Shown: positions 53,935 to 54,320 of the stretch, one piece after another | How positions within the stretch are numbered: position 1 is the first letter of the stretch | Layout of the letters: every line of letters begins with the position of its first letter | Assembly: GCF_001194135.2 (NCBI RefSeq) | Contig: NC_068993.1 | Coordinates: 11,327,568 to 11,391,567, forward strand | From: Octopus bimaculoides | Taxonomy: Eukaryota | Length of the DNA stretch: 64,000 nt | Reading direction: 5' to 3' | Program-made: the position numbers and the translations under genes | Notes under the pieces: model-generated | The model's input: only the letters and a program-made list of their open reading frames with translations | What the model was told of the DNA's origin: nothing | Database searches by the model: none

Positions 53935-54320
53935 AGCAACAGTAACATCCACCCTTAGGGGTCAGCCACATTTAAGTGGCAAATATACTTCACTTTATCG
54001 TGCAGTTACTGTTAACACCTCGTTCAGAGATTTAACATTGCTTGTTTTCACATTTTCGATATCAGTGAATAACTTCACTGGAAAAAGACTTATATATTGC
54101 CAAGGGATTGTCATTCTCATCGAAGGTCGGCGATTATCGTACGCTGAAGAAGGGAAATAACCCTGAAACTCGGGTCCGTACGTATCGCAGATCAAGATGG
54201 GAAGGATAACTTCCCTTGGCAAAAATAGACAGGACACAGATATGTGTCGATAAGCCAGCTGGAGGAGATGTTCTCCTGGGGCTAATAGCAACAGTAACAT
54301 CCACCCTTAGGGGTCAGCCA
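53935..54320 (+). mobile_element. Retrozyme-like non-autonomous retroelement: 352-bp hammerhead-containing unit plus 34-bp terminal redundancy
   Basis: Identical 34-mer AGCAACAGTAACATCCACCCTTAGGGGTCAGCCA at 53935-53968 and 54287-54320. Internal hammerhead and many hairpins. No coding capacity. Right end abuts (AT)n. Confidence 0.7.
54130..54188 (+). ncRNA. Type I hammerhead ribozyme (self-cleaving), predicted cleavage after GUC at 54176
   Basis: Read directly. Stem I is CGTACG(54138-43)/CGTACG(54177-82), extended by GCGAT(54130-34)/ATCGC(54184-88) across a small internal loop. Core CTGAAGA (54144-50). Stem II AGGG-AAATAA-CCCT (54151-64). GAAAC (54165-69). Short stem III AC-tcgg-GT. Cleavage triplet GTC (54174-76). 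All conserved core nucleotides are present. Confidence 0.88.

What the first reader, a model, noticed from the sequence alone, without database searches (positions are those of the whole stretch)
53935..54320. Retrozyme-like element: 352-bp unit with 34-bp terminal redundancy, suggesting a circular RNA template
Seen in sequence: a perfect 34-bp direct repeat 352 bp apart, the hammerhead in the middle of the unit, and no ORF. The unit boundary is not at the cleavage site, so the insert is a circularly permuted 1.1-mer. Established: metazoan non-LTR retrozymes are roughly 170-400 nt units with type I hammerheads that give circular RNAs and are thought to borrow Penelope-like reverse transcriptase. 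Inference: this copy was reverse-transcribed from a 352-nt circRNA or multimer of a viroid-like mobile RNA family in this probably cephalopod genome. I cannot verify whether this family has been described.
Basis: partly seen in the sequence, partly recalled or inferred. Interest (0 to 1): 0.9.

Follow-up and report, generated by a model that had tools for sequence, protein, structure and literature searches.

The report
Solo hammerhead retrozyme copy, mussel-related
This is one genomic copy, slightly longer than one repeat unit, of a small non-coding mobile element that carries a self-cutting hammerhead RNA; it is related to the circular-RNA "retrozymes" already described in mussels, so it is a new member of a known class, not a new kind of element.

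Summary
A perfect 34-bp direct repeat (53935-53968 and 54287-54320) brackets a 352-bp unit. The unit carries a complete type I hammerhead on the + strand (54138-54182, cleavage after 54176).

- **Hammerhead:** my descriptor hits once in the window and once in 400 simulated windows. Rfam gives only 16.2 bits against a threshold of 34.
- **Fold:** read as a circle, the unit folds far better than shuffles (z = -7).
- **Homology:** outside the ribozyme, the unit aligns collinearly with the Mytilus galloprovincialis retrozyme Mg353 (353 nt): 150 of 200 aligned columns are identical. Permissive-gap scoring gives 0-2 of 1000 composition-preserving shuffles; strict scoring gives about 0.01-0.06. Coral and axolotl retrozymes do not align.
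- **The 34-mer:** it falls inside that alignment, so it is element sequence and not a target-site duplication.

The locus is therefore a 1.1-mer, longer than one unit, of a non-LTR retrozyme. The 34 nt also match the 30-40-bp "tail" of Penelope-like element insertions; that link is inferred.

Not tested: copy number in the genome, circular RNA, and host identity. With one ribozyme, this copy as assembled cannot release a circle itself. Verdict: new member of a known kind, moderate interest.

The parts
53935..54320 (+). Whole insertion: 386 bp, made of one 352-bp unit plus 34 bp of terminal redundancy
   Evidence: Direct repeat at spacing 352. No other copy in the window. GC of the 352-bp unit is 42.6%, against 34.8% for the window.
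53935..53968 (+). 34-mer, copy 1 (5' end of the insertion). It is A+C-rich: 80% in the first 20 nt.
   Evidence: It aligns to the mussel segment TATCACCAG..CCCAGTAGTCAGC.
54287..54320 (+). 34-mer, copy 2 (3' end). This is the candidate Penelope-type 'tail', running from 111 to 144 nt 3' of the ribozyme cut.
   Evidence: The 30-40-bp tail is described in PMC8557442 and PMC11167929.
54138..54182 (+). Type I hammerhead ribozyme: helix I 6 bp, helix II 4 bp, helix III 2 bp plus a tetraloop. Cleavage falls between 54176 and 54177.
   Evidence: Descriptor: 1 hit in the window, 1 in 400 simulations. RF00163 full-length match, 16.2 bits, below the gathering score of 34. No ribozyme on the minus strand.
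54097..54222 (+). Long imperfect hairpin arm that extends helix I. 54097-54143 pairs with 54177-54222 (39 bp in six helices), with the hammerhead at its tip.
   Evidence: Helix list of the circular minimum-energy fold. The arm alone has z = -7.5 against dinucleotide shuffles.
54243..54281 (+). Best-conserved block shared with the mussel retrozyme: TGTGTCGATAAGCCAGCTGGAGGAGATGTTCTCCTGGGG. It includes the hairpin GGAGGA/UUCUCC.
   Evidence: Local alignments. Hairpin 54261-54266 with 54271-54276.
53951..53980 (+). Two small hairpins at the repeat/unique boundary: ACCC/GGGU (53951-53962) and GCCAC/GUGGC (53965-53980). The 3' end of the insertion (the equivalent of 53968) falls inside the second stem.
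   Evidence: The mussel circRNA consensus has a stem-loop, GTCAGCAC-TTTTGT-GTGCTGAC, at the aligned place.
53938..54013 (+). 9-bp helix AACAGUAAC (53938-53946, inside the 34-mer) paired with GUUACUGUU (54005-54013, unique part of the unit)
   Evidence: The remainder of the unit folds with z = -3.4 when the 34-mer is included and z = -1.8 when it is left out.
53889..53934 (.). AT-rich upstream flank (15% GC over 53895-53934), preceded by an (AC)24 microsatellite at 53840-53887
54321..54345 (.). AT-rich downstream flank, ATATATATATTATTCCGATATATGC. No short target-site duplication is visible around the 386-bp insert.
   Evidence: Penelope endonuclease prefers AT-rich DNA with ATT (PMC11167929).

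Best explanation
The locus is a solo genomic copy (one unit plus 34 nt) of a non-autonomous, non-coding retroelement of the metazoan non-LTR retrozyme class. It belongs to a lineage that also includes the 350-390-nt retrozymes of the mussel Mytilus galloprovincialis.

How it most likely works, with shown and inferred steps kept apart. Shown here: the ribozyme architecture, the strongly structured 352-nt unit, the homology to Mg353, and that the 34-mer is element sequence.

Inferred from the published life cycle (PMC7229834). Source arrays elsewhere in the genome are transcribed as multimers. The type I hammerhead cuts between the equivalents of 54176 and 54177, probably best as a dimer because helix III is only 2 bp. 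The 352-nt monomers are closed into circles by the tRNA ligase RtcB.

Inferred from this locus. A reverse transcriptase supplied in trans copied a periodic template (a circle or an uncut multimer) for 386 nt. It started at the equivalent of 54320 and stopped at 53935, and the cDNA was integrated into AT-rich DNA. This gives a copy whose ends overlap by 34 nt and whose boundary is 110 nt away from the ribozyme cut.

Inferred, and less certain (about 0.4). The enzyme was that of a Penelope-like element. The 34 nt then correspond to the 30-40-bp 'tail' that lies between the two internal start sites of Penelope reverse transcription, in an A+C-rich stem-loop downstream of the hammerhead.

As assembled, this copy has one ribozyme. 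It can be cut once but cannot release a unit-length RNA, so it is probably a dead-end daughter copy.
For: Repeat and unit.

Hammerhead: descriptor finds 1 site in the window and 1 in 400 simulations. RF00163 aligns over its full length. The 6/4/2-bp architecture is the 'canonical' metazoan type that PMC4209133 and PMC7229834 tie to retrozymes, as opposed to the minimal motifs of Penelope-like elements.

Structure: circular fold of -116 kcal/mol, z = -7.05, 0 of 300 shuffles as good. A hammerhead-competent fold costs only 4.7 kcal/mol more.

Class features: 352 bp, 42.6% GC, no coding signal, ribozyme on one strand only.

Homology to Mg353 with the hammerhead removed: collinear alignment of ours 60-299 to mussel 49-273, 150 of 200 aligned columns identical. 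Against dinucleotide shuffles, 0 of 1500 reach the score under three permissive-gap schemes. Against window shuffles that keep local composition, 0-2 of 1000. Against the mussel circRNA consensus, z = 2.9-3.9. Coral and axolotl controls are not significant.

The 34-mer is element sequence: for the alignment, supported by the fold tests.

Penelope link: tail length of 30-40 bp, internal start in an A+C-rich stem-loop 3' of the hammerhead, AT-rich/ATT targets (PMC11167929; PMC8557442). Here the 34-mer is 65% A+C (80% in its first 20 nt), contains or abuts two hairpins, and both flanks are AT-rich.
Against: Only one copy is available: none elsewhere in the window and none in any collection I could search. 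So multi-copy status and the position of other copies' ends are unknown.

The hammerhead is well below Rfam's threshold (16.2 against 34 bits). It has A-U instead of the usual G-C at the base of helix II, and no activity data exist.

The homology to Mg353 depends on the scoring scheme. Strict-gap local schemes give p of about 0.01-0.06. One global scheme is not significant. nhmmer gives only E = 0.4, with part of that alignment running into the flank, and reports nothing for the rotated unit among decoys. The 34-mer or the junction taken alone does not align significantly.

No Penelope RT or endonuclease is present in the window. Under a simple random 5'-truncation model, an overlap of 30-40 nt would be a coincidence of about 3%; it is not evidence for a tail on its own.
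Confidence: 0.7

Rival explanations
1. The element is the same retrozyme, but the 1.1-mer is not a primary insertion. Either it is what is left of a longer tandem array after deletion or unequal exchange, or it is a true n.1-mer that a short-read assembler collapsed to a single turn of the repeat. In the second case the locus would carry two or more ribozymes and could itself release circles.
For: The window is a draft scaffold with 23 runs of N in 64 kb. Retrozymes normally occur as tandem arrays (PMC7229834). Nearly identical tandem units are commonly collapsed by short-read assembly (my own knowledge).
Against: No gap or N lies inside 53935-54320. Solo 'monomer' copies are common in retrozyme families (bioRxiv 10.64898/2026.07.22.740005). 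Collapse would not change the phase of the two ends, so the 34-nt overlap would still need explaining.
Confidence: 0.15
2. A 318-bp hammerhead-bearing insert (53969-54286) flanked by a 34-bp target-site duplication of host DNA. The template would then have been linear and shorter than one unit, and nothing would point to a circular or multimeric template.
For: Direct repeats flanking an insert are by default target-site duplications. Metazoan retrozymes have duplications 'larger than 4 bp' when present (PMC7229834). Penelope duplications vary in length (PMC8557442). The 34-mer alone does not align significantly to the mussel unit.
Against: The 34-mer sits inside the collinear alignment to Mg353, with 18 of 23 aligned positions identical. 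Substituting genomic 34-mers reaches the real score in 1-28 of 1000 trials, and deleting it lowers the score from 71 to 49. It adds -15.2 kcal/mol to the circular fold, a gain matched by 6% of GC-matched 34-mers and 1.7% of its own shuffles. It raises the structure z-score of the non-arm part from -1.8 to -3.4. Documented Penelope duplications are 8-10 bp (PMC3846280).
Confidence: 0.08
3. A solo pLTR or a heavily 5'-truncated copy of an autonomous Penelope-like element, not a separate non-autonomous family.
For: Penelope pLTRs carry type I hammerheads near the 3' end of the insertion unit, and solo pLTRs exist (PMC3846280; PMC8557442). Retrozymes are phylogenetically close to pLTRs.
Against: There is no RT or GIY-YIG frame next to the unit or anywhere in the window. 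The ribozyme is the canonical 6/4/2 form, not the minimal Penelope form with a long helix II and no helix III. The 352-nt periodicity of the template does not fit a 3-4 kb element. The closest relative found is a retrozyme.
Confidence: 0.05
4. An endogenised cDNA copy of an exogenous viroid-like or satellite-like circular RNA, rather than a resident genomic retroelement.
For: Small size, strong self-pairing and a self-cleaving ribozyme. About 100-codon stop-free stretches on both strands are unusual: 0.17% of shuffles.
Against: The ribozyme is in one polarity only. The unit is homologous to a genome-encoded mussel retrozyme. There are no protein homologues.
Confidence: 0.02

Closest known systems
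Mytilus galloprovincialis non-LTR retrozyme (genomic clone Mg353 and the circRNA consensus; Cervera & de la Pena 2020, PMC7229834)
   Same: The unit length is almost identical (352 against 353 nt). Both have a type I hammerhead with a 4-bp helix II and a GAAAC-NNNN-GUC helix III. The non-ribozyme sequence is collinear when both are read from the cleavage site: 75% identity over 200 aligned columns. Both have a conserved GC-richer block 50-120 nt 3' of the cut and a stem-loop starting at GTCAGC. Both have low GC and a highly paired circle.
   Different: The hammerhead sequence differs: CUGAAGA-AGGG/CCCU-UCGG here, CUGAUGA-GUCU/AGAC-GCGC in the mussel. There are many indels (63 gap columns). The mussel family is shown experimentally to be tandem, with about 5000 copies, and expressed as abundant circles; here there is one 1.1-mer and no expression data. 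The host is different and unidentified.
Metazoan non-LTR retrozymes in general (coral, axolotl), and from my own knowledge newt satellite 2 and Schistosoma Sm-alpha repeats
   Same: 150-450-bp non-coding units, canonical type I hammerhead, GC below 50%, self-paired circular fold. Solo monomers occur beside the arrays.
   Different: There is no detectable sequence similarity to the coral or axolotl units outside the ribozyme. This locus is not a tandem array.
Penelope-like elements: pLTR plus 30-40-bp 'tail' (Poseidon PAc of Anolis, PMC11167929; Adineta vaga Pen families, PMC3846280)
   Same: A hammerhead lies upstream of the 3' end of the insertion unit. The terminal extension of 34 bp falls in the 30-40-bp range. 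The 3' end lies in an A+C-rich region with stem-loops. The target is AT-rich. No clear target-site duplication is visible.
   Different: There is no RT/GIY-YIG reading frame. The hammerhead is canonical, not minimal. In PAc the start sites lie about 85-92 nt 3' of the cut; here the ends lie at 110 and 144 nt. Whether the 34 nt arise by the tail mechanism is inferred from one copy.
Plant LTR retrozymes and hammerhead viroids (Avsunviroidae)
   Same: Small, self-paired circular RNAs processed by hammerheads. More-than-unit-length copies arise from periodic templates.
   Different: Plant retrozymes have type III hammerheads in LTRs, a primer-binding site and polypurine tract, and 4-bp duplications. 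Avsunviroids have ribozymes in both polarities and no DNA stage. Neither applies here.

Membership tests
Metazoan non-LTR retrozyme (Cervera & de la Pena 2020) | Canonical type I hammerhead: helix I about 6 bp, helix II about 4 bp, helix III 1-2 bp with a small loop, and an intact CUGANGA/GAAA/UH core | tested here: met
   The definition is quoted from PMC4209133.
Metazoan non-LTR retrozyme (Cervera & de la Pena 2020) | Short repeat unit of 150-450 bp with GC below 50% | tested here: met
   352 bp and 42.6% GC
Metazoan non-LTR retrozyme (Cervera & de la Pena 2020) | Tandem arrangement (dimer to multimer) with a hammerhead in every unit | tested here: not met
   There are only 1.1 units and one hammerhead at this locus. 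It fits the 'monomer / solo retrozyme' category. Assembly collapse is not excluded.
Metazoan non-LTR retrozyme (Cervera & de la Pena 2020) | Non-coding | tested here: met
   The 100-103-codon open stretches have no homologues and no Pfam match. The plus-strand stretch has no ATG.
Metazoan non-LTR retrozyme (Cervera & de la Pena 2020) | The unit-length RNA is predicted to form a stable, highly self-paired circle that leaves the hammerhead free to fold | tested here: met
   z = -7.05. 56% of bases are paired, and the hammerhead-competent fold costs +4.7 kcal/mol.
Metazoan non-LTR retrozyme (Cervera & de la Pena 2020) | Sequence relationship to an experimentally characterised retrozyme | tested here: met
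   Collinear similarity to Mg353 and to the mussel circRNA consensus outside the hammerhead. Weak under strict-gap scoring and by nhmmer.
Metazoan non-LTR retrozyme (Cervera & de la Pena 2020) | Many dispersed or tandem copies in the host genome | not testable with these tools
   The host genome is not available. Single copy in the window. No hit in the metagenome, viral or protein collections.
Metazoan non-LTR retrozyme (Cervera & de la Pena 2020) | Expressed as linear and circular RNA of unit length; self-cleavage demonstrated | not testable with these tools
   No transcriptome or wet-lab data
Metazoan non-LTR retrozyme (Cervera & de la Pena 2020) | Coexistence with autonomous Penelope-like elements in the same genome | tested here: inconclusive
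   No PLE reading frame in this 64-kb window. PLEs are reported in cephalopods, but the host is unverified.
Penelope-like element (pLTR of an autonomous copy) | Adjacent single ORF encoding a telomerase-like RT plus a GIY-YIG endonuclease | tested here: not met
Penelope-like element (pLTR of an autonomous copy) | Minimal hammerhead variant in metazoan PLEs: helix II 6-8 bp, short helix I, no or vestigial helix III | tested here: not met
   Helix II is 4 bp, helix I is 6 bp, and helix III is present.
Penelope-like element (insertion signature) | [quoted passage not shown] | tested here: inconclusive
   The 34-bp overlap has the right length and is element-derived. One copy cannot show that ends cluster at two start sites.
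Penelope-like element (insertion signature) | Integration into AT-rich or microsatellite DNA | tested here: met
   The flanks are 15% and 27.5% GC, with ATATATATATTATT downstream and (AC)24 upstream.
Rfam RF00163 Hammerhead_1 | Score at or above the gathering threshold (34 bits) | tested here: not met
   16.2 bits over model positions 1-45. For calibration, unrelated metagenomic hammerheads of the same architecture score 32.5-34.4 bits.
Hammerhead viroid (Avsunviroidae) or viroid-like satellite | Self-cleaving ribozymes in both polarities | tested here: not met
   The descriptor hits the + strand only. No other ribozyme family appears.

The most novel reading that the evidence does not exclude
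The 34-nt terminal redundancy is the Penelope 'tail'. That would be a direct insertion footprint showing that a non-LTR retrozyme cDNA was started by a Penelope-type reverse transcriptase at the distal of two internal start sites, in an A+C-rich stem-loop about 110-144 nt 3' of the hammerhead. The block conserved between this unit and the mussel retrozymes would then be the enzyme's recognition and initiation module. That module would be conserved across distantly related hosts while the rest of the unit drifts. It would turn the proposed retrozyme-Penelope partnership from co-occurrence and pLTR similarity into a mechanistic, testable mapping of start sites.
Probability: 0.4. Interest if true: 0.55.

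Novelty: new member of a known kind. Interest (0 to 1): 0.35.

Why it matters
Retrozymes are a natural, ribozyme-driven route to abundant small circular RNAs in animals. Which enzyme puts them back into the genome is still argued from co-occurrence and pLTR similarity.

This locus adds three modest things.
- It is a member of the class in a further host, and it is detectably related to the mussel family outside the ribozyme. Retrozyme sequences had been described as species-specific.
- It is a clean, young insertion (34 of 34 identical) whose ends lie away from the ribozyme cut. The template must therefore have been longer than one unit.
- Its overlap has the length and sequence character of the Penelope 'tail'. 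This gives a concrete prediction for where the ends of other copies should fall.

None of this is a new kind of system.

Tried and rejected
**Rfam.**
- The whole window at gathering score gave nothing. A 901-nt search at E<=10 gave no hammerhead. Only a 71-nt search showed the sub-threshold RF00163 match.

**Searches for other copies.**
- blastn of the unit against the window found only itself.
- An exact look-up of the 101-aa ORF found no record.
- The four longest translations, joined into one query against 5.8 billion proteins, gave no hit. This trick could only work if gene callers had called ORFs on related copies.
- A family-specific hammerhead pattern gave 0 hits in the metagenome contigs.
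- A generic architecture pattern found 7 metagenome loci and 0 viral loci. The 7 loci are an unrelated hammerhead family.

**Paralogous empty site.**
- The flanks match only microsatellites elsewhere in the window.

**Host identification.**
- A search with LINE-fragment proteins returned no informative names; the best named hit was a Penaeus monodon protein at 62% identity. The 'cephalopod' guess is left unverified.

**Penelope RT or endonuclease in the window.**
- ORF inspection and motif regexes found only one decayed 'RYADD' site at about 38395 on the minus strand, with stop codons around it. I did not pursue it.

**Composition of the 34-mer against its flanks.**
- This was not discriminating: the likelihood ratio was under 2.

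**nhmmer with Mg353.**
- The top hit in the window falls in the unit, but at E = 0.4 and partly in the flank. The rotated unit was not reported among decoys. I therefore rest the homology claim on the shuffle-calibrated pairwise alignments and mark it as dependent on the scoring scheme.

**Pyatkov et al. 2004.**
- The paper is not held, so Penelope duplication lengths in Drosophila could not be checked.
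Full report
**1. The observation**

A 34-nt stretch, AGCAACAGTAACATCCACCCTTAGGGGTCAGCCA, occurs at 53935-53968 and again at 54287-54320, exactly 352 nt apart and without a mismatch. The match extends to 37 nt with one mismatch. Nothing else in the 64-kb window resembles the unit.

The unit contains a complete type I hammerhead on the + strand:
- helix I: CGUACG (54138-54143) paired with CGUACG (54177-54182)
- core: CUGAAGA
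- helix II: AGGG/CCCU, closed by AAAUAA
- GAAA
- helix III: two base pairs closed by UCGG
- GUC, ending at 54176

The predicted cut is therefore between 54176 and 54177. That is 242 nt from the 5' end of the insert and 110 nt before the unit boundary.

I wrote a structural descriptor for such motifs. It hits this site and no other on either strand of the window. It hit once in 400 simulated windows of the same first-order composition.

Rfam is much less impressed. There is nothing at gathering score and nothing at E<=10 in a 901-nt search. A full-length alignment to Hammerhead_1 scoring 16.2 bits, against a threshold of 34, appears only when 71 nt are searched. Unrelated natural hammerheads of the same geometry, which I pulled from metagenomes, score 32.5-34.4 bits. 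So this one is a divergent example. Its most obvious oddity is A-U rather than G-C at the base of helix II.

The statement 'no ORF' is not literally true. There is a 101-aa ATG ORF on the minus strand and a 100-codon stop-free stretch on the plus strand. Neither has homologues or Pfam matches.

**2. Anatomy**

Read as a 352-nt circle, the + strand folds to -116 kcal/mol. That is z = -7.05 against dinucleotide shuffles, with none of 300 as good. Only 1.5% of 352-nt pieces of the same window fold as well.

The dominant feature is a 126-nt hairpin arm (54097-54222) that prolongs helix I by 39 base pairs, with the ribozyme at its tip. This arm alone has z = -7.5. Forcing the catalytic core to stay single-stranded costs only 4.7 kcal/mol. 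This agrees with the published remark that metazoan retrozyme circles leave the hammerhead free to fold (PMC7229834).

Other points of anatomy:
- There is no ribozyme on the minus strand.
- The unit is 42.6% GC in a 34.8% GC window.
- Both immediate flanks are AT-rich: 15% and 27.5% GC. ATATATATATTATT lies downstream and an (AC)24 microsatellite lies 47 bp upstream.
- No short target-site duplication is visible around the 386-bp insert.

**3. What it is related to**

I took reference sequences from the supplement of Cervera & de la Pena 2020:
- the mussel genomic retrozyme Mg353
- a 393-nt consensus of cloned mussel circular RNAs
- a coral retrozyme
- an axolotl retrozyme

I rotated every unit to begin at its cleavage site and removed the hammerhead (first 6 and last 39 nt). 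I then aligned the remainders.

The window's unit and Mg353 give a long collinear alignment: ours 60-299 against mussel 49-273. It has 150 identities in 200 aligned columns and 63 gap columns. The significance tests were as follows.

| Comparison and null model | Scoring | Result |
|---|---|---|
| Ours vs Mg353, 1500 dinucleotide shuffles | three permissive-gap schemes | 0 of 1500 reach the score |
| Ours vs Mg353, 1500 dinucleotide shuffles | two strict schemes | 24 and 89 of 1500 |
| Ours vs Mg353, shuffles within 15-, 25- or 40-nt windows (keep local composition) | permissive schemes | 0-2 of 1000 |
| Ours vs Mg353, same window shuffles | strict scheme L1 | 10-27 of 1000 |
| Ours vs mussel circRNA consensus | four schemes | z = 2.9-3.9 |
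| Reversed sequence; ours vs coral; ours vs axolotl; mussel vs coral | same schemes | background level |

The signal has limits:
- One global scoring scheme is not significant.
- nhmmer puts its best hit of the whole window in the right place and on the right strand, but only at E = 0.4, and the alignment runs partly into the flank.
- The rotated unit was not reported at all in a decoy run.

I conclude that the unit is homologous to the mussel retrozyme lineage. I mark that this rests on shuffle-calibrated pairwise alignment to one family.

**4. Is the 34-mer element or target?**

This decides whether the template was longer than one unit.

In the alignment, the 34-mer corresponds to the mussel segment TATCACCAG..CCCAGTAGTCAGC. 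This lies in the region where the mussel authors placed their adjacent divergent primers. Of its 23 aligned positions, 18 are identical.

The substitution tests point the same way:
- Replacing the 34-mer with GC-matched 34-mers from the window reaches the real alignment score in 1-28 of 1000 trials. Shuffling it does so in 14-74 of 1000. Deleting it lowers the score from 71 to 49.
- It adds -15.2 kcal/mol to the circular fold. That gain is matched by 6% of GC-matched 34-mers and 1.7% of its own shuffles.
- It forms a 9-bp helix with 54005-54013.
- It raises the z-score of the non-arm part of the unit from -1.8 to -3.4.

Each line is moderate. Together they make a 34-bp target-site duplication unlikely. 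I give that reading 0.08.

The copy is therefore a circularly permuted 1.1-mer. Its template must have been periodic, either a circle or an uncut multimer. The identity of the two 34-mers (34 of 34) suggests a young event.

**5. How it most likely works**

The published life cycle of metazoan retrozymes runs as follows (PMC7229834):
1. Tandem arrays are transcribed.
2. The hammerhead cuts.
3. RtcB ligates the monomers into circles.
4. A reverse transcriptase supplied in trans makes cDNA that is integrated elsewhere.

Helix III here is only two base pairs. The segment ACUCGGGU is self-complementary if G-U pairs are allowed. So cleavage is probably more efficient in dimeric form, as described for many metazoan hammerheads (PMC4209133).

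The locus adds a detail about the last step. In Penelope-like elements, reverse transcription starts inside the RNA at two adjacent sites in an A+C-rich stem-loop downstream of the hammerhead. The 30-40 bp between the two sites appear in a fraction of genomic copies as an optional 'tail'. The endonuclease prefers AT-rich DNA with ATT (PMC11167929; PMC8557442; PMC3846280).

Here:
- The overlap is 34 bp.
- It runs from 111 to 144 nt 3' of the cut.
- Its first 20 nt are 80% A+C.
- It contains one hairpin (ACCC/GGGU), and its end falls inside the stem of a second (GCCAC/GUGGC).
- The mussel consensus has a stem-loop at the aligned place.
- The flanks are AT-rich.

So the overlap fits the Penelope tail. 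This is an inference from one copy, and I give it about 0.4. A recent preprint that derives retrozymes from pLTRs does not mention the tail.

As assembled, the copy has a single ribozyme. It cannot release a unit-length RNA, so it is most likely a dead-end daughter, the 'monomer' category. The exception would be if the draft assembly, which has 23 gaps in 64 kb, collapsed a longer array.

**6. Comparison with what is known**

The element meets these retrozyme criteria: ribozyme type, unit size, GC content, non-coding nature, predicted structure, and similarity to a characterised member. It fails the tandem-array criterion at this locus. Copy number, expression and cleavage could not be tested.

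It is not an autonomous Penelope pLTR. There is no RT or GIY-YIG frame, and the ribozyme is not of the minimal type. It is not viroid-like in the strict sense, because the ribozyme is in one polarity only.

The host could not be identified. Penelope elements, some recently active, are reported in cephalopods, and 235 Hammerhead_1 loci were annotated in the giant squid. The only held paper I found containing both 'retrozyme' and 'cephalopod' is PMC8557442, and it does not link the two.

**7. Verdict**

It is a new member of a known kind. Interest is moderate (0.35). The most interesting open point is whether the ends of other copies confirm the Penelope tail signature, and whether the block shared with mussels is the reverse-transcriptase entry site.

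Noticed in passing
window 9034-9512: A 231-bp unit repeated 2.1 times in tandem (79% matches). It looks SINE-like, with a tRNA-like '...GTTCAAATTCCGCCGAGGTCGA...' segment. Related fragments recur across the window (translations such as 'AFHPFGVD'). ARAGORN calls no tRNA in the window.
   Followed up: partly
window 53935-54286 read as a circle: Both strands have stop-free stretches of about 100 codons. Both reach 100 or more in only 0.17% of mononucleotide shuffles. There is no ATG in the plus-strand stretch, no homologues and no Pfam match. This is probably a by-product of the self-complementary structure, but it is unexplained.
   Followed up: partly
window 54340-54660: A unique, GC-richer block lies directly 3' of the insertion, before a (GT)-rich stretch. 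It is not repeated in the window and has no Pfam match in its open frames. Its nature is unknown.
   Followed up: partly
window 12827-13087 (-) and 13427-13642 (+): Two fragments in opposite orientation look to me like the conserved C-terminal region of a non-LTR (LINE) protein. Homologues include an uncharacterised Penaeus monodon protein at 62% identity and unnamed metagenomic ORFs at up to 94%.
   Followed up: partly
window ~38395 (-): An 'LYRYADDL' motif resembles reverse-transcriptase motif C. It is surrounded by stop codons, so it may be a decayed RT remnant. It lies next to an N gap at 37558-38038.
   Followed up: partly
L006:1-2758 (metagenome contig Ga0209339_1059418); also L001, L002, L004, L005, L007: A 1354-bp tandem unit carries a canonical type I hammerhead (GCACUG-CUGAUGA-GGGG..CCCC-GAAAC-GCGC-GUC; Rfam 32.5-34.4 bits) and short CTAACCCTAACCC telomere-like repeats. 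This recalls endonuclease-deficient, telomere-associated Penelope-like or Terminon elements. In L002, L005 and L007 the shared sequence stops 9 nt after the cut and AT-rich DNA follows. The family is unrelated in sequence to the window's unit.
   Followed up: partly
whole window: Microsatellite density is very high, with 98 Tandem Repeats Finder rows in 64 kb, mostly di- to tetranucleotide. There are 23 runs of N totalling 8234 bases. This is a short-read draft scaffold in which tandem repeats may be collapsed.
   Followed up: no
Mg353 vs Ax353 (reference sequences, not the window): The mussel and axolotl retrozyme remainders show a marginal excess of similarity under two permissive scoring schemes (4 of 300 and 17 of 300 window shuffles). 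I did not pursue this.
   Followed up: no
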